DNA of 63,926 bases, filler included, from Hausera hauseri (Eukaryota): assembly GCA_046269625.1 (NCBI GenBank). It is 12 parts of 12 records of this genome, joined end to end, with 100 filler letters (N's around TTAATTAATTAA, not from the genome) between each part and the next. Parts side by side here need not be neighbours in the genome. Positions count along the whole stretch, not along the records: positions 8,436 to 14,428 come from JBJURY010157089.1; 11 more parts are not named here. One strand, written 5' to 3'. A program made the translations under genes and the position numbers. Below are positions 8,436-14,528 of the stretch, piece by piece (within the stretch, counting starts at the first letter, position 1; the number at the start of each line of letters is the position of its first letter). A model generated the notes under the pieces. That model did not search any database. It was not told the origin of the DNA and was given only the letters and a program-made list of their open reading frames with translations.

Positions 8436-8660
8436 TTAAATTGACTAATGCATTTAATCAAATTTACATCTATTCAAGTATAGTTGAGCCGATAATGGTC
8501 GGCTCAGATCGATTTCCTCTGTTAAGATGTGTTTGGATAGATGGCTCAAAATTTAAGTATGCTGATCCAGTATATATTGTTCCGACCAATCTAATGTATT
8601 TGCCTTTTTCATTAACAAGCATAAGCAAAATAGAAGTTAATATTCGTGATGATAGTTGTA
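8436..8660 (+). pseudogene. C-terminal fragment of another Polinton penton-like gene
   Basis: NQIYIYSSIVEPIMVGSDRFPLLRCV....MYLP....ISKIEVNIRDD aligns with the C-terminus of 1869..2585. Confidence 0.8.
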
Positions 8661-9854
8661 TACACCAAACTAGTTAACTGACGAAAGAGATGGGGAGTTG
8701 AGATAGTGGACGGTGGTGTATTGCAATATGGATGACGGATTCAATAGACTTATAAAATATACGTCGCCAGCACATATGTATTGTTTGTGATTACCAAATT
8801 GAAAAATACGTGAAGATAAATTGTAGTGGCAATTCTTATGATGATACAAATTTTTCTCTATGTAAATAGTATATAAAGTTTGTATATGAAATTATACATG
8901 AATATTGTTTCAGTTTTTACTACGAATTGAATTGTAAATGTAAATACTAAATACAATTAGATATCAAGTTTTTCAAATCGATTTGTGTTTTAAAAATAAG
9001 AAGTCATATATGTTGGTAAAAGAAAGAAAATTGAAGAAAATGATTAAAGAAGATGAAATAATAAAGAAAAAAAAAAGAAAACTTCTGAGCAAACATGATT
9101 TGGCATCTCAGGGAGAACATCTATCAAACAAGATTATCAAAATTCATGGATAAAATATATGTATATCCGATATTATACTCAATTCAAACTCAGTGAAGAA
9201 CGAAAGTTCGTGTTAAGAAAACTGATGTGCAAATGATGAATTTGATCACAAAAATGCCGAAGTTACACAACTCAATGGAATATTTTAACTGTATTGAGAT
9301 TACAATTATGCTGATTAAAAACTATTTCAAACGATTATTAAACATTGCGGAATATATCTGTATATAATGTTTTTCTGTTGAAAGTCTGATGTATAGTATT
9401 GAAAAAATGGTTACTGATTGGGAACCACTGAAAAATAAAAAATTAAATAACGATTCTGACGGAATTTGCTCCAAAGACAAAATTGTCGCGGCTTTCAGTG
9501 AGTGGAGGAATTGGAAAAAGCAATTGAATTGTGTTTTTGACGTCTATGCTCTAACCACATTCCCAAAGGTTAAAAGCCAAATATTGTTGTCAGAAAAATA
9601 TAACGGAGTATGTCAAACCCTGTGAATGGATATTTAAATTAGTTATGCGAGTATATGTCGAACAATATCTCTGTTTAAACAAATGGGATTACCATCTACT
9701 GTGGAATTTTCCTTGTTATTCTGCACATATTGAAAGATTAAAAAAGATAAATCTCATTGAATTACAAGGATTGAACAAAATATCAGAACAATATCTGGAA
9801 GAGAAGAAATTTCTGGATGTATTATATGTATTATGTACATTATATGATATATTT

Positions 9855-10117
9855 ATCAATGCGGTAGATAGATTTCTGGATCAATCAACCGCTGTTATTT
9901 TACATTCATTCGAGACATCATTGAACATCGTAGGATACTTCAAAACGATGTACATGCTCGATCCACCCTCAGAACGACCGATTGTTAAAAAGGAATTTGG
10001 TCCGTACTATGAAAATAGTTACATATGCTCTATGAAGAGGTTGATAATTGTAAAATCGTCTATGATAGACAAACTGAATTGTTGGAACCAAATATTGCTC
10101 CTGGAATGCCATCCAAT
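9855..10117 (+). pseudogene. Probable axonemal dynein heavy chain N-terminal fragment
   Basis: FK.MYML....ERPIV...F..YY, then a frameshift into LHMLYEEVDNCKIVYDRQ.......PGMP, resembling the DHC_N1 region of beta-type dyneins. Confidence 0.5.
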
Positions 10118-11101
10118 ATGATTAAGTTAAGAATATCATCTCTGGAAACGACAATTGTTAATCATGGAAAACAAAAATTCCATAACGTTGAAAATGCAGT
10201 AAATGAAGTTCGAAATGGATCTACAATTCATATTGGAAGATTTGGGTTGTGTGGAATACCTGAAAATTTAATTGCTGCTATTGTTAAAACTGGGGTCAAA
10301 GATTTGACGATTGTTGGAAATAATTGTGGTACCAAGGATTTTGGAATTGGACTTTTGATAAAAAATAAACAGGTAAAACCTATCACTGCATCATTTATTG
10401 GAGAGAATCCAGAAACAATTTGACAGTTTCTGAATGGAGACATTGAAATTGAATTTTGTCCCCAAGGTACAATTGCGGAACGAATTAGAGCTGGAGGTTC
10501 GGGCATTCCCGCCTTCTACACTCCAACGAGTATAAGTTCTCTGATTGAAAGCGAAGGCTCGCCAATTAAATACTCAAATGACGGAGTACTCCTTCTATCT
10601 AGAAAACCAAAAGAAACACGGGATTTTAATGGTGTAAGGTATTTATTGGAATCAGCACTTGTTGGTGACTATTCTTTCATAAAGGTATGGAAGGCCAATA
10701 AAATTGGCAATTTGATATTTCCAAAAACGGCTAGAAACTTCAATCATCCCATGTGTAAAGCAAGTAAAAGGACTATACCTGAAGTGGAAGAGGTTGTTGA
10801 AGTTGGCGAATTTAATCCAGATCAAGTTAATATGTCTCGAATTTTTGTTGATCGGATAATTATAGGCAAAAAATTTGAAAAGCGTATTTCACGTAAAGTG
10901 ATAAAGGAGAAATTCAAATCAAAAACGGTAGAAACAAATGAAAAGAAAATACACAAAAAATTGATAGCAGAGAAAATAATCAGACGAGCAGCCGTTGAAT
11001 TGAAAGAAGGGATGTATTTAAATGTGGGAATTGGAATACCAATATTACTACCAATTTACATTCCAAAAGGTATGAACGTTACTTGGCACAGTGAGAATGG
11101 T
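10118..11101 (+). pseudogene. OXCT1: Succinyl-CoA:3-oxoacid CoA transferase, N-terminal part, intronless, one in-frame stop
   Basis: FGLCGIPENLI, PQGTIAERIRAGGSGIPAFYTPT, KTARNFNHPMCKA and NVGIGIP. It ends exactly after the catalytic SENG motif. Confidence 0.92.
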
Positions 11102-11745
11102 CGCGTGCTAGATTCTGAACGATTTTGTGAAAACGTGAAAAAAGTTTATGGAGAAATCAATTTTCCTGGTGATGATAGAACTAATCAAATATATATGTTC
11201 AGTGCTATTTTTCCCACAGCAATTCAAGATTTAGCAAGGAATTTGTTGAAAAGCTATTTAATTTTCGCCGTTTGTATTATCGAGTTTGCTAACAGTGATG
11301 TTAAACAAGAAGTGATCTGTGTGAAGCCGAAAGAGAAATTGAATGTAGCATTAGAATATGTTAAAACGATTCCCGATCAGAAAATGTTGGTGTTTGTTGA
11401 AAGTAAAAGAATATTTGACTTTTTGGATATAAAATTGGGTTACCTGGGTTGTATGGTAACAACAATCCACGGTGATTGTGATCAACTGCAGAGAGAATCA
11501 GCATTGAATGACTTTAAAAGTGACAGAGTTACATATATGGTTACAACGAACGTTGCCGATATTTCTAAAGTTGATGTCGTTGTCAACGCTAACATGACCC
11601 AAGAAGATGATACATACGTTCATAGTCAGTCGAACTGGTCGATGTAGAAATATTGGATGGGCTGTCAGCTTCTTTGATAATACAAAGGGCATCAGTTTTG
11701 CTTCTGGTTTAATCGGTAGATTAGAAGAAGTTAATCAAGAGGTCG
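11102..11745 (+). pseudogene. vasa: Vasa/DDX4-like DEAD-box helicase C-terminal fragment
   Basis: MFSA.FP..IQ.LA, LVFVESKR, TIHGD..Q.QRE.AL.DFK and TYVH/RTGRC.N.G.A.SFFD. The ARGL of motif V is deleted, and there is an internal frameshift near 11625. Confidence 0.85.
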
Positions 11746-12089
11746 TCATTGTGCCATTAACTGAAGTAACTATTGAAAATCCGATAGCGGCTGAAAATAT
11801 ATTAAACCGCGGTTTAAAGAATCGTCATATTGGAACTACGGTAATGAATAGAGAAAGCTCTCGAAGTCATACAGTCTTTACAATTTCACTGGAAACACGT
11901 CATAAAGACGGAAATGTTGATAATATCATGAGGAGTCATTTACATTTGGTGCATTTGGCTGGTAGCGAAAAACAAAAGGATGCAAAAACCGAAGGGCTAC
12001 GTCTAAAAGAAGCTATAAATGTTGACAAATCTCTATATGTATTAGGACGAGTTATCAGTGCCCATGTTGAACTGACTAAAGGAAAACAC
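11746..12089 (+). pseudogene. Kinesin motor fragment (KIF15/kinesin-12-like), switch I and II only
   Basis: MNRESSRSHTVFTI and LVHLAGSEKQKD.KTEGLRLKEA.N.DKSL..LG.VI. There is no P-loop. Confidence 0.9.
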
Positions 12090-12632
12090 GAAGCTCTGCG
12101 GCACAATCGTCTAAAACTTGTTCAAATATCGACGAATTACAATTACATAAAGACGAAATCAAAAATGGTGGAATACCCATTGATTGCCAAGGCAGTAGCA
12201 GTATTTGACGTACAGATTGAACCAGCCATTAAAAGTCAAACGTGGGGAGATGATATAGCAGTATTTTTAGACGAAAGTTTGAAAACCATCTATGAATTGA
12301 AAAGACGTTTATTTATGACCCAAGATAATTTCGAAGTGATCAAAGATTTGTTGAGTCAGTGGAAAGGTATGCCTCTGTATATAAGAAAAGATCGAAAGAA
12401 TGATACAACATTAAACCTGGATGATAGACAGAATTCAAAACATAATCGGTACAATCAGAATTCAGCAGTTGGTGTGAAAATCCAGCCATTAGCACAAGGT
12501 AGTTGTCAACCTTTCGAAGTTAATGAAGACTCAACAGACGATTGGTCGAACTATATCGACTTCATGGAGGGCAATATTACTAATGGATTCCTCACCACAA
12601 TAAAGTGTAATTTACTATATGTAGTCAAGCAA
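12090..12632 (+). pseudogene. Axonemal beta-type dynein heavy chain (DNAH9/11/17-like) N-terminal fragment
   Basis: YN......VEYPLI, W..MPLY.RKD.K...LNL..R......RY......G.KI and W..YIDF....I.NGF...I.C.L.Y. Confidence 0.8.
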
Positions 12633-13290
12633 ATCAAAAATGAAAGTAAAAGTCATAAAATATTTAGTAAAGGAATTGATTTTGTTGCAAAATCTCGGGA
12701 AGAAGGTGATAATTCGTTGCCTCCGAGATCGGATAAAAGTAAATTAGCGGGACCACCAATTGCCAAATATAAAAAATTTGCTCCAAAGGTGTCGATAAGG
12801 ATTAATTCTAAATTTGCTAGCTTTGAAAATATTAGAAATATCGATTATAATCCACTTTCTGATCGTAGTTTCACGAGCTCTCAGGCTATTCGTGATACGG
12901 CCTATATGAAGTGGTATCTAAATAAATTGAAAGAAAACAAATTCAATATATTGAATTTACAAAAACGAATCAATTCTGAGGAAAATGAGAAGACAAAGCA
13001 ATCAAAAATAGAAGATAATAAAGTTGTTTATGAAACTTGGTCCAAAAACAAACGAAAGTACTTTTTAGATTTAAAGAAAAAGAGATCTGGGAACCAACAA
13101 CCCACTGATAACAAAAAAAATAAATCTACTGCACTTGCCTTTAAAATCTGGAAGAAAAGAAAGATGAGTATTTGAAGGAACAAATGAAAAAGGATATGGA
13201 AAGTAAAAAGGAAAAGGAAAAGAGTAAAAATTTTGCTAGAAAAGTGAAACAGCAGCGGTCGAAAGAGGGTGTCGCTGAATGGGAAAAAAG
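12633..13290 (+). pseudogene. MAP9-like K/E-rich coiled-coil fragment
   Basis: Repeated AY..WY..K / VYETW.K.K / AF..WKK.K / EWEK motifs in a charged coiled coil. Confidence 0.45.
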
Positions 13291-14528
13291 TCTCAGAGTA
13301 CTTTGGGATAATATCTGTGGTAATGAGGAGATTATGTCAACGTTGAAGCAGATGTATCACGACCGGTTAGATAATATTAGTGGTGCTGGTAATAAAGCAG
13401 TGACAAATCGGCGGAAAAAAGGTGCTAGTGAAGTGAAAAGGTCGGATTATCAAGATAAGTTTCCGATGGAACCTATTGGGAAACATTCCACAATGCAACC
13501 GATAACAACGAAAAGCTTATCTTTATGCACTTCACCAAAGAGTGATAACCATATCGGTTTGTATTCCATACGAAGAAACAAACATACTGAAAGAAAATTC
13601 AGTTGTAGTACTGATAAAACAGCAGACGAAACAAGAAACTGGACGATCTTGAAGAACTTCTTTCTTTATAAAGACGTAAAAGAAAAAGGTAGTTGGCAGA
13701 ACATGCTTGAAACTTACCTTCTAAATTCCGAACTATCGGTTGAAATGAATTTGGGAATGTTAACGGCTCTCTTCAGAGCCACAATTATTGATTACGACGG
13801 GGTTCCGGATCCCCTTAAAAAATCCGAAAAAATCGAACTTTTTCTGGAAATTCGATATTCAAACAGGAATTATCAGAAAAAAATCAGAATCTACTATCCT
13901 GGACGAACGAGAACCCAGACCAATAACAAAAAATGCTTGCGTTTAATTCTATTCGCGCTAATTCAGGCTGTGTCAAAAGTAATGAAATCATGACCAGGAC
14001 TACGAAAGATCAGGTTAAAGGAAAGAATGAGCCAATAAACAAAAAAGGTCAGTTTTTCTGCATTTCTGTATATACTATCGCTGGCCGTCTGCGCTCCCCG
14101 CCTTAAGTTCCCTTTTGATAATTACTGCGTTAAAACTTATTGGGGAAAATTACATAACTTTTATATTACTGTTCTATGCCATACTAAAATAAATGTAAAA
14201 ATAAGCTTATTCTCCCTTTAGAAATCGTCTCCGAAAGTAATTGTACAAAGCATTAGATTTAAGGTCTTCACGGACGCCTTATCGTACTTATATCGCGCCA
14301 GACCTATAATAATATTGCAACAGATAGTTGGAAAAATTAAATACAAAAAAGTAACCAACTATCTGTTGGAAGGTGTCATCCGTTAAATAAATACTATATA
14401 ATTAAAAGATTATTGAACCTCCATGTAGNNNNNNNNNNNNNNNNNNNNNNNNNNNNNNNNNNNNNNNNNNNNTTAATTAATTAANNNNNNNNNNNNNNNN
14501 NNNNNNNNNNNNNNNNNNNNNNNNNNNN

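What the first reader, a model, noticed from the sequence alone, without database searches (positions are those of the whole stretch)
9645..13993. Train of intronless host gene fragments fused in frame into one ancestral ORF of more than 4 kb
Seen: dynein, OXCT1, vasa, kinesin, dynein, MAP9-like and unknown pieces of 0.25-1 kb, all sense and intron-free. The five junctions between recognisable pieces (~10118, 11101, 11745, 12090, 12632) all keep frame. The stop (10421) and frameshifts (~10015, ~11625, ~13160) lie inside homology blocks and look like later decay. Five in-frame joins by chance is (1/3)^5, under 1%, before counting strand. No piece is a complete enzyme, and the donors are plausibly germline or sperm transcripts. 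Inference: serial mRNA capture by template switching into a retroelement polyprotein under selection for an open frame, or splicing of captured exons followed by retroposition. It could also be a source of small RNAs against host genes.
Basis: partly seen in the sequence, partly recalled or inferred. Interest (0 to 1): 0.82.

Follow-up and report, generated by a model that had tools for sequence, protein, structure and literature searches.

The report
Mosaic reading frame of host-gene fragments
A 4.6 kb broken reading frame in an unidentified AT-rich animal genome is stitched, without introns and in frame, from pieces of at least four or five unrelated host genes, and it seems to have stayed open far longer than a dead pseudogene should.

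Summary
The core observation holds. On the + strand a chain of open frames (9368-13990) has 1 stop in about 1,540 codons, against 9% stops off-frame. It has four frameshifts.

Four blocks are firmly identified:
- OXCT1, from its start codon to the catalytic SENG motif
- a vasa/DDX4-type helicase C-terminal half
- a kinesin-12-like motor fragment
- an outer-arm dynein beta heavy-chain tail fragment

All junctions between identified blocks keep the parents' native frame, with no intron, poly(A) or filler.

A second copy, 88% identical, spans the kinesin/dynein junction, so this is a small family and not an assembly chimera.

New points:
- OXCT1 and kinesin blocks lost 12-22% of residues invariant in real orthologues. 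Neutral decay to that degree predicts about 13 stops; one is seen.
- The tail of the frame (13751 onward) runs into a high-copy repeat with a histone-type stem-loop.
- No retroelement protein, LTR or TIR lies in the 6 kb piece.

Best reading: an RNA-mediated, template-switch mosaic retrogene family, once kept open by selection, now decaying. The carrier, expression and organism are unresolved.

The parts
8438..8656 (+). Left flank, not part of the mosaic. It is the C-terminal end of an ORF from a hyper-abundant repeat, cut by the contig start and broken off at 8656.
   Evidence: Summed contig depth is about 1e6 against 7-12 for single-copy sequence. 32 contigs continue differently after 8656. 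An Atlas feature hit to a Sputnik/Polinton minor-capsid cluster is only a lead. No word-search, viral-contig or Pfam relative.
8657..9367 (+). AT-rich upstream stretch, moderately repeated. It holds broken open frames that may be a more decayed 5' extension of the chain.
   Evidence: Frame 2 has only 2 stops (9194, 9365) between 9089 and 9622. Further open runs lie at 8756-8947 (f2) and 8944-9150 (f1). A Vps5/BAR hit is weak and below cut-off, E 8e-4, in a K-rich stretch. Depth falls from about 90-350 to about 18-40 near 9050.
9368..10117 (+). Frame 2 passes to frame 0 at about 9555-9622, then back to frame 2 at about 10019-10118.
   Evidence: Open frames. No Pfam, PDB or Atlas relative. Diverged copies (88%) cover 9177-9572 and 9844-10111. 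Codon-position periodicity is weak.
10118..11104 (+). OXCT1 (succinyl-CoA:3-ketoacid CoA-transferase) fragment. It runs from a likely native start codon, through the whole N-terminal domain and linker, to the catalytic SENG motif. An in-block TGA lies at 10421-10423.
   Evidence: Pfam CoA_trans E 2.8e-21 and 6e-40. PDB 3dlx residues 87-309, E 6e-72. tblastn orthologue residues 27-337, 52-54% identity, one frame. The end at SENG and the N-terminus are shown. 59 of 72 invariant columns are kept.
11105..11745 (+). vasa/DDX4-DDX3-type DEAD-box helicase fragment, from about motif II/III to near the C-terminus. A 2-nt loss at about 11622 shifts frame 2 to frame 0. Motif V (ARGLD) is deleted in frame and SAT has become SAI.
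   Evidence: Helicase_C E 3.2e-12. Bombyx vasa residues 237-388, E 5e-24; Drosophila vasa residues 220-387. The continuation VSRTGRCRNIGWAVSFFD in frame 0 is. Another contig carries a net +2 nt at 11596-11633 (table 4).
11706..12119 (+). Kinesin-12 (KIF15)-like motor-domain fragment. Switch I is intact; switch II DLAGSE has become HLAGSE. Its 5' limit overlaps the vasa tail by up to about 40 nt of ambiguous assignment.
   Evidence: Pfam Kinesin E 1.3e-28, profile positions 155-272 of 327. KIF15 residues 169-306, E 6e-28. tblastn 11724-12122. 14 of 18 invariant columns are kept.
12120..12632 (+). Axonemal outer-arm beta-type dynein heavy-chain tail fragment (DNAH9/17 residues about 733-913).
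   Evidence: PDB DNAH9 E 3.7e-19, DNAH17 E 1.4e-17, Chlamydomonas/Tetrahymena beta heavy chain E 1e-7 to 1e-4. End of Pfam DHC_N1, E 4e-4. An 88%-identical 567-nt contig spans 11755-12321, which includes the kinesin/dynein junction (record 6).
12633..13300 (+). Lysine-rich stretch with repeated W..K motifs. A frameshift (frame 0 to frame 2) lies at about 13160 in an A-rich run.
   Evidence: Pfam CCDC34 E 0.047, 13.9 bits against a cut-off of 35. No PDB hit. Translation.
13301..13750 (+). Unidentified open stretch. It resembles one SH2 domain only faintly.
   Evidence: 0 hits at E <= 0.001 among 1.84 billion representatives. One PDB SH2 hit, E 0.012-0.024. The single-sequence fold was useless, pLDDT 39.5. 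Run X2 holds 84-85% identical contigs at 13414-13737.
13751..14428 (+). Right-hand repeat. A roughly 77-nt unit of about 300 copies holds a histone-type 3' stem-loop (13760-13804). Repeat segments of rising copy number follow. The chain's frame runs on into it and stops at TGA 13991-13993.
   Evidence: Rfam RF00032: 30.3 bits, gathering score 34, E 1e-5. Many contigs begin at 13751. Joints run from 13823/13827 to 14041-14288. Depth goes 1261, 111, 308, 823. Codon-position composition is flat.

Best explanation
This is one decayed member of a small family (roughly 2-8 copies) of a mosaic, retro-derived reading frame.

Fragments of at least four or five unrelated host mRNAs were copied head to tail into one DNA:
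- OXCT1, from its start codon to the catalytic SENG motif
- a vasa/DDX4-type helicase C-terminal half
- a kinesin-12-like motor piece
- an outer-arm dynein beta heavy-chain tail piece
- probably a CCDC34-like coiled coil
- two or three unidentified stretches

The most likely route is a reverse transcriptase jumping from template to template in germ cells (inferred). The joins kept each parent's native frame. The fused frame was then kept free of stops, by selection on its translation, while the residues each parent enzyme needs drifted (inferred from the counts). The family duplicated. This copy has since picked up one stop, four frameshifts and a repeat at its 3' end.

Shown: the pieces, their frames, the absence of introns, poly(A) or filler at the joins, the second copy, and the excess of lost invariant residues over stops. 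Inferred: the RNA route, template switching and selection.
For: - Pieces and frames.
- One stop in 1,540 chain codons against 9.1% off-frame.
- At least three firm junctions, four with the CCDC34-like block, are in the native frame. Chance is (1/3)^3 to (1/3)^4, that is 3.7% to 1.2%.
- Each block aligns without interruption over 130-310 residues, stretches that are split by many introns in orthologues of most animals (background knowledge). No A-tract or filler lies at any junction.
- OXCT1 ends exactly at SENG. The next residues, VL, occur at that spot both in OXCT1 (SENG-VLG) and in DEAD-box helicases (VLDEAD), a possible microhomology.
- An 88%-identical contig spans the kinesin/dynein junction. 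A second run holds parts at 84-100% identity.
- The frameshift at about 11622 is private to this copy (table 4).
- OXCT1 keeps 82% of invariant columns where real orthologues keep >=95%. Its identity to orthologues is 52% where they share a median of 67%. The lost sites are scattered. Its tree branch is 3.03 against a median of 0.3.
- Kinesin keeps 78-88% of invariant columns.
- Neutral divergence of that size (d about 0.086) predicts about 13 stops. No simulated replicate (0 of 400) gave one stop or fewer. One stop fits d <= 0.01-0.02.
- The mechanism has precedent: LTR-mediated retroposition with multi-parent chimeras (PMC5131818) and maize Bs1, with three parents, transcribed and translated (PMC13317346).
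Against: - No reverse transcriptase, gag, LTR pair, target-site duplication or convincing poly(A) tail lies in the 6 kb. AATAAA plus A6 at 14034-14046 is not significant: there are 12 AATAAA and 18 A-runs in the piece.
Intron loss, exon boundaries and nucleotide microhomology are therefore untested.
- The selection argument assumes the parents were ordinary orthologues and not divergent paralogues.
- Sequences of the other copies were not available, so no dN/dS could be computed. Copy depth is uneven (about 1x over OXCT1, 6-8x over vasa and kinesin), and paralogues may contribute to it.
- The other copies do not restore the shift at about 13160.
- No RNA evidence.
- Ascertainment: the window was picked because it looked in frame.
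Confidence: 0.52

Rival explanations
1. Neutral chimeric processed pseudogene. One template-switch accident happened to join the pieces in frame. It never had a function, and the frame is open only because it is young.
For: Catalytic residues are lost in three blocks: HLAGSE, SAI, the deleted ARGLD. There is one stop and four frameshifts. No domain set is complete. The scan selected this window for being in frame.
Against: 18-22% of invariant residues are lost, and the losses are scattered. That needs about 9% neutral divergence, which predicts about 13 stops, not 1. Unidentified stretches of about 180 codons with flat composition are also stop-free; chance is about 1e-7 at an 8% stop frequency. 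Chance of three to four native-frame joins is 1-4%.
Confidence: 0.2
2. DNA-level capture. The fragments were picked up by a DNA transposon (Pack-TIR, Helitron or Maverick/Polinton cargo), or by replicative template switching or end joining, from intron-poor genes or from older retrocopies.
For: Both flanks are high-copy repeats. The right one has a fixed terminus at 13751 joined in other contigs to variable inner points, as in internal-deletion derivatives. The left one may be Polinton-like. No retroelement hallmark was found. Pack-TIRs exist in animals (PMC8277862).
Against: No terminal inverted repeats lie between the flanks. The left repeat is about 1e5-fold more abundant than the mosaic and is simply broken off at 8656. 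Pack-type captures are short (median 224 bp, PMC8277862) and genomic, so introns would be expected. Here about 2.5 kb from four genes is uninterrupted coding sequence, all in sense.
Confidence: 0.15
3. The fragments sit inside a retroelement polyprotein, where an open frame is enforced because downstream pol must be translated or because of cis-preference.
For: It would explain frame keeping without protein function. LTR elements with captured in-frame host pieces are known: Bs1 (PMC13317346) and the cases in PMC5131818.
Against: No gag, protease, RT, RNase H or integrase signal lies in any frame of 8436-14428. The chain starts after an AT-rich stop-laden stretch. It ends at 13991 inside a repeat with no coding signal.
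Confidence: 0.1
4. Assembly or library chimera.
For: The piece is a short contig bounded by repeats. The best-holding run may be the sample the assembly came from.
Against: Independent short-read contigs match the piece exactly across 10020-10872. A diverged copy (88%) spans the kinesin/dynein join. A second study holds near-identical and diverged parts. Artefactual joins would not keep frame or show shared decay.
Confidence: 0.03

Closest known systems
LTR-mediated retroposition with multi-parent chimeric retrocopies (Tan et al. 2016, PMC5131818)
   Same: Partial, intron-free, sense mRNA fragments are joined internally. More than two template switches are possible. The products are often in frame with the parents. 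They can be amplified further.
   Different: That paper's example chimera combines two parents and lies between discontinuous LTR-retrotransposon parts, with 6-bp microsimilarities. Here there are at least four or five parents, no retroelement sequence is seen in 6 kb, and microsimilarity is untestable.
Maize Bs1 retroelement gene (Elrouby and Bureau; summarised in PMC13317346 and PMC5131818)
   Same: It is a hybrid reading frame built from fragments of several host genes, none complete. It is transcribed and translated and linked to reproductive tissue.
   Different: Bs1 has three parents, one of them out of frame, and sits inside a recognisable LTR element in a plant. Here there are more parents, all identified ones are in frame, the host is an animal and the carrier is unknown.
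LINE-type template-switch chimeras (for example U6-L1 and mRNA-L1; PMC4476161)
   Same: Serial template jumps by a reverse transcriptase give head-to-tail sense chimeras without introns.
   Different: Those are usually two-part, end in a LINE/SINE or mRNA 3' end with poly(A), and are flanked by target-site duplications. No clear poly(A) or duplication is seen here, and the chain has seven or more parts.
Pack-TIR, Pack-MULE and Helitron gene-fragment capture (PMC8277862)
   Same: Trains of host gene fragments that may form chimeric frames and multiply.
   Different: Those captures are DNA-level, retain introns and are bounded by TIRs or Helitron ends. None of this is seen here.

Membership tests
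Chimeric retrocopy by RT template switching (LTR-mediated type) | Sense, intron-free fragments of host mRNAs | tested here: met
   Each identified block aligns without interruption in one frame over 130-310 residues, apart from point disruptions. Parent intron positions in this genome could not be checked.
Chimeric retrocopy by RT template switching (LTR-mediated type) | Flanked by parts of an LTR retrotransposon whose inner region was replaced | tested here: inconclusive
   No LTR pair and no gag or pol signal lies in 8436-14428. The contig ends in repeats on both sides, so the true element ends may lie outside it.
Chimeric retrocopy by RT template switching (LTR-mediated type) | Microsimilarity at switch points | not testable with these tools
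The only hint is a shared 'VL' at the OXCT1/vasa join.
LINE-mediated processed (chimeric) pseudogene | 3' poly(A) tail and target-site duplications | tested here: inconclusive
   AATAAA plus A6 lies at 14034-14046, where copy number steps up. Such motifs are common in this AT-rich piece: 12 AATAAA and 18 A-runs. No direct repeats flank the unit.
Pack-TIR / Pack-MULE / Helitron capture | Terminal inverted repeats or Helitron ends around genomic, intron-bearing fragments | tested here: not met
   No inverted repeat lies between the flanks. The blocks are uninterrupted coding sequence.
Functional OXCT1, DEAD-box helicase, kinesin or dynein gene | Complete domain set with catalytic motifs kept | tested here: not met
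   OXCT1 stops at SENG and lacks the C-terminal domain. It has an in-block stop and keeps 82% of invariant sites. The helicase lacks motif I/II and motif V. In the kinesin, switch II D has become H. The dynein piece is about 170 residues of a roughly 4,500-residue chain.
Histone 3' UTR stem-loop (Rfam RF00032) | Score at or above Rfam's gathering threshold; 6-bp stem GGCUCU/AGAGCC, 4-nt loop, ACCA-type 3' flank | tested here: inconclusive
   30.3 bits against 34, E 1e-5. The stem is perfect, the loop is CUUC and the flank is ACAA. No histone coding sequence lies upstream.

The most novel reading that the evidence does not exclude
A family of 'gene-fragment trains': long frames assembled from many germline mRNA pieces and kept open by selection, without regard to the parents' enzymatic residues. 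Two readings fit. It could be a translated new protein family born in one burst of RNA-level exon shuffling. It could be a non-autonomous retroelement whose spread demands an uninterrupted frame, so that only in-frame captures survive.
Probability: 0.2. Interest if true: 0.85.

Novelty: new variant of a known kind. Interest (0 to 1): 0.62.

Why it matters
Chimeric retrocopies with two parents, and Bs1 with three, are the textbook cases of RNA-mediated exon shuffling. A frame built from at least four or five, perhaps seven or more, unrelated genes would be the most complex example so far. This one has every identified join in frame, and there are signs that the frame outlived the parents' catalytic residues.

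It would offer a direct test of two questions. Can multi-template reverse transcription create translated new genes in animals in a single step? What kind of selection keeps a frame open without conserving its sequence?

If it proves to be a neutral accident, it is still a clean natural record of serial template switching among germline transcripts.

Tried and rejected
TRIED, LED NOWHERE
- First 'dynein' piece (9368-10118): Pfam at E up to 10, PDB phmmer at E up to 10 and the ESM Atlas found nothing. TCR and racemase hits at E 0.25-1.5 are noise.
- Last piece (13145-13990): the exhaustive HMMER search of 1.84 billion representatives gave 0 hits. The SH2 lead rests on one PDB chain. The AlphaFold single-sequence model had pLDDT 39.5, so no fold search was run.
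- Chimeric relatives: the word search with the 522-aa frame found only kinesins at <=44% identity. Metagenome and viral contig scans found nothing.
- Organism: OXCT1 orthologues peak at 55% identity (spiders, hemipterans, a nematode, molluscs), and the tree does not place the fragment. The left-flank ORF gave no word-search or viral hits. The organism stays unknown. Run names were coded.
- Repeats and RNA genes: no tRNA; no Rfam family other than the histone stem-loop. No LTR, TIR or meaningful tandem repeats.

REJECTED
- Small introns as the cause of the frameshifts. The alignments run straight across the stop and the shifts, with bases missing and none extra.
- Serial insertion of separate polyadenylated retrocopies. 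There are no A-tracts at the junctions.

Full report
SCOPE. Only 8436-14428 of the window is genome. Everything below refers to that piece.

1. THE OBSERVATION

The + strand carries a chain of overlapping open frames:
- frame 2, 9368-9622
- frame 0, 9555-10118
- frame 2, 10019-10420
- a TGA at 10421
- frame 2, 10424-11644
- frame 0, 11598-13172
- frame 2, 13145-13990

Along the chain there is 1 stop in about 1,540 codons. The two other frames carry 280 stops in 3,077 codons (9.1%), and the reverse strand 4-6%. This is one former reading frame of about 4.6 kb, broken by one stop and four frameshifts. Frame 2 upstream has only two further stops back to 9089, and open runs reach 8756. The frame may once have started nearer the repeat breakpoint at 8656.

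2. WHAT THE PIECES ARE

Firmly identified blocks:
- OXCT1. Pfam CoA_trans E 2.8e-21 and 6e-40. Human and pig SCOT E 6e-72. Orthologue residues 27-337 of about 511 map to 10157-11101 in one frame at 52-54% identity. The ATG at 10118 followed by a short leader fits the gene's own start. The block ends exactly at the catalytic SENG motif.
- A vasa/DDX4-DDX3-type helicase. Helicase_C E 3e-12. Bombyx vasa E 5e-24, residues 237-388. The block continues in frame 0 as VSRTGRCRNIGWAVSFFD, so the shift at about 11622 lies inside motif VI.
- A kinesin motor fragment closest to KIF15. E 6e-28, residues 169-306.
- An outer-arm beta-type axonemal dynein heavy-chain tail fragment. DNAH9 residues 744-909, E 4e-19.

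Weak or unidentified stretches:
- 12633-13300 is lysine-rich with repeated W..K motifs. It gives only a sub-threshold CCDC34 match, E 0.047.
- The last stretch has no relative at all among 1.84 billion representatives and only a faint SH2 resemblance.

3. THE JUNCTIONS

- OXCT1 to helicase: both sides in frame 2, at 11101-11110.
- Helicase to kinesin: both in frame 0, within 11706-11745.
- Kinesin to dynein: both in frame 0, within 12092-12130.
- The dynein block ends at 12632 and the frame simply runs on.

With three firm joins, chance is 3.7%. With the CCDC34-like block it is 1.2%. Common orientation adds nothing if the route is cDNA synthesis. No junction has an A-tract, filler or intron-like insert. 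This argues against stacked insertions of separate polyadenylated retrocopies. At the OXCT1/helicase join the residues VL belong to both parents' conserved sequence (SENG-VLG and VLDEAD). That is a possible microhomology, and it cannot be tested without the parents' DNA.

4. REAL DNA, AND A FAMILY

One run (X1) holds 87% of the sampled words. A second run (X2), from another study and labelled as another organism, holds parts. Laying their contigs gave:
- exact contigs over 9692-9968, 10020-10872 and 12607-13089;
- diverged contigs (about 88%) over 9177-9572, 9844-10111 and 12199-12484;
- a 567-nt contig at 88% identity over 11755-12321, so a second, diverged copy shares the kinesin/dynein junction;
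- in X2, contigs at 99-100% identity over 10483-10783 and at 84-88% elsewhere.

Summed depth suggests about one copy over most of OXCT1 and the CCDC34-like part, and 6-8 copies over helicase plus kinesin. Either the copies differ in make-up or paralogues add depth there.

One contig has a net +2 nt at 11596-11633, exactly what is needed to undo this copy's shift. That frameshift is therefore private and late. At about 13160 the other copies differ by -7 nt, which does not restore the frame, so that site is unresolved. An assembly chimera is effectively excluded.

5. WAS THE FRAME KEPT OPEN BY SELECTION?

- The OXCT1 block is 49-55% identical to 23 orthologues from many phyla. Those orthologues share a median of 67% with one another over the same columns.
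- It keeps 59 of 72 columns that are invariant in all of them (82%). Every real orthologue keeps at least 95% in a leave-one-out test.
- The lost sites are scattered, not clustered as compensated frameshifts would be.
- In a maximum-likelihood tree its end branch is 3.03 against a median of 0.3, and its position is unresolved.
- The kinesin block keeps 14 of 18 universally invariant columns (78%). If the stretch at the junction is set aside, 14 of 16 remain, about 88% (my recount from the list). Real kinesins keep at least 90%.
- The helicase has lost motif V in frame, and SAT has become SAI.

The drop in overall identity matches the drop at invariant sites. Amino-acid change has therefore been blind to the parents' functions. 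If that much change (about 18%, or about 8.6% per nucleotide) had happened without any selection, simulation on the chain's own codons predicts about 13 new stops (2.5% quantile 7). No replicate (0 of 400) gave one stop or fewer. One stop fits a divergence of 1-2% at most.

The unidentified stretches, whose codon positions look nearly flat, are also stop-free over about 180 codons each. The simplest reading is that the fused frame was protected from stops for most of its history and was released only recently.

Three caveats apply. The parents might be divergent paralogues. No second full copy was available for dN/dS. The window was chosen for looking in frame.

6. THE SURROUNDINGS

- Left flank. 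8438-8656 is the end of an ORF of a repeat with summed depth near one million. It breaks off sharply at 8656, where 32 other contigs continue differently. The Atlas points weakly to Polinton/Sputnik minor-capsid-like clusters. Nothing else matched.
- Right flank. Many contigs start matching at 13751. That unit (to about 13827, roughly 300 copies) holds a near-canonical histone 3' stem-loop, AACGGCTCTCTTCAGAGCCACAA. Rfam gives 30.3 bits against a gathering score of 34, E 1e-5. No histone coding sequence lies upstream. Other contigs join 13823/13827 to 14041-14288. Depth then rises 111, 308, 823 towards the contig end.
- This pattern fits either the 3' flank of tandem histone repeats or the terminus of a mobile element with internal-deletion or truncated derivatives.
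- No reverse transcriptase, gag, integrase, transposase, LTR pair, TIR or tRNA was found anywhere in the piece. AATAAA plus A6 at 14034-14046 coincides with a step in copy number, but such motifs are common here.

7. MECHANISM

Most likely (about 0.5) is a cDNA made by a reverse transcriptase that switched among several germline mRNAs. This is the process documented for LTR elements in animals, with microsimilarity at switch points and multi-parent products (PMC5131818), and for LINEs (PMC4476161). Read in the direction of cDNA synthesis, the enzyme would have entered OXCT1 mRNA at the SENG codons. It would then have run to that mRNA's 5' end before jumping again, which fits the block starting at its own ATG. 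Integration, selection on an open frame, a few duplications and recent decay would follow.

Rivals:
- a never-selected accident (0.2);
- DNA-level capture by a transposon or by repair (0.15);
- an artefact (0.03).

8. COMPARISON AND NOVELTY

The kind is known: chimeric retrocopies and Bs1 (PMC13317346). The differences here are:
- the number of parents, at least four or five identified and up to seven or more segments;
- native frame at every identifiable join;
- the evidence that the frame outlasted the parents' functional residues;
- the lack, so far, of any recognisable carrier.

I rate it a new variant of a known kind. The donors are plausible germline or sperm transcripts from general knowledge: axonemal dynein, vasa, a CCDC34-like protein, and OXCT, which has testis forms in mammals. 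Expression and small RNAs are untested, because no RNA run holds the sequence.

Noticed in passing
window 8438-8656: A hyper-abundant repeat: summed contig depth is about 1e6 in run X1 and about 1.7e4 in X2, against 7-12 for single-copy sequence. It encodes the C-terminal end of an ORF (...IEVNIRDD). It is cut at 8656, where other copies continue GKPIESSFGK. The Atlas hints at a Polinton/Sputnik minor-capsid-like protein.
   Followed up: partly
window 13751-13827 (stem-loop 13760-13804): A near-canonical histone 3' stem-loop (GGCTCT CTTC AGAGCC, 30.3 bits, just under Rfam's threshold). It sits inside a unit of about 300 copies, is followed by a GGGGTTCCGGATCCCC palindrome, and has no histone coding sequence upstream. 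It could be a histone-repeat flank or a mobile-element terminus; this is unresolved.
   Followed up: partly
window 13823-14428: Other contigs join 13823/13827 directly to 14041, 14109, 14115 or 14288. Copy number rises towards the contig end (111, 308, 823). This is the pattern of internal-deletion or 5'-truncated derivatives of a repeat.
   Followed up: no
window 8436-14428: Strong strand asymmetry: 18 runs of six or more A and none of six or more T. AT skew is positive across the mosaic and its left flank.
   Followed up: no
window 8944-9150: A lysine-rich open stretch with a weak, sub-threshold Vps5/BAR-domain match (E 8e-4). It could be a further captured fragment or a composition artefact.
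   Followed up: partly
window 10483-10783: A second run, from another study and labelled as another organism, holds this part at 99-100% identity but holds other parts only at 84-88%. The explanation could be a very close relative, the same species under another label, or carry-over.
   Followed up: no
window 14315-14371: An inverted repeat with 17-nt arms (94% complementary) and a 23-nt spacer, inside the right-hand repeat.
   Followed up: no
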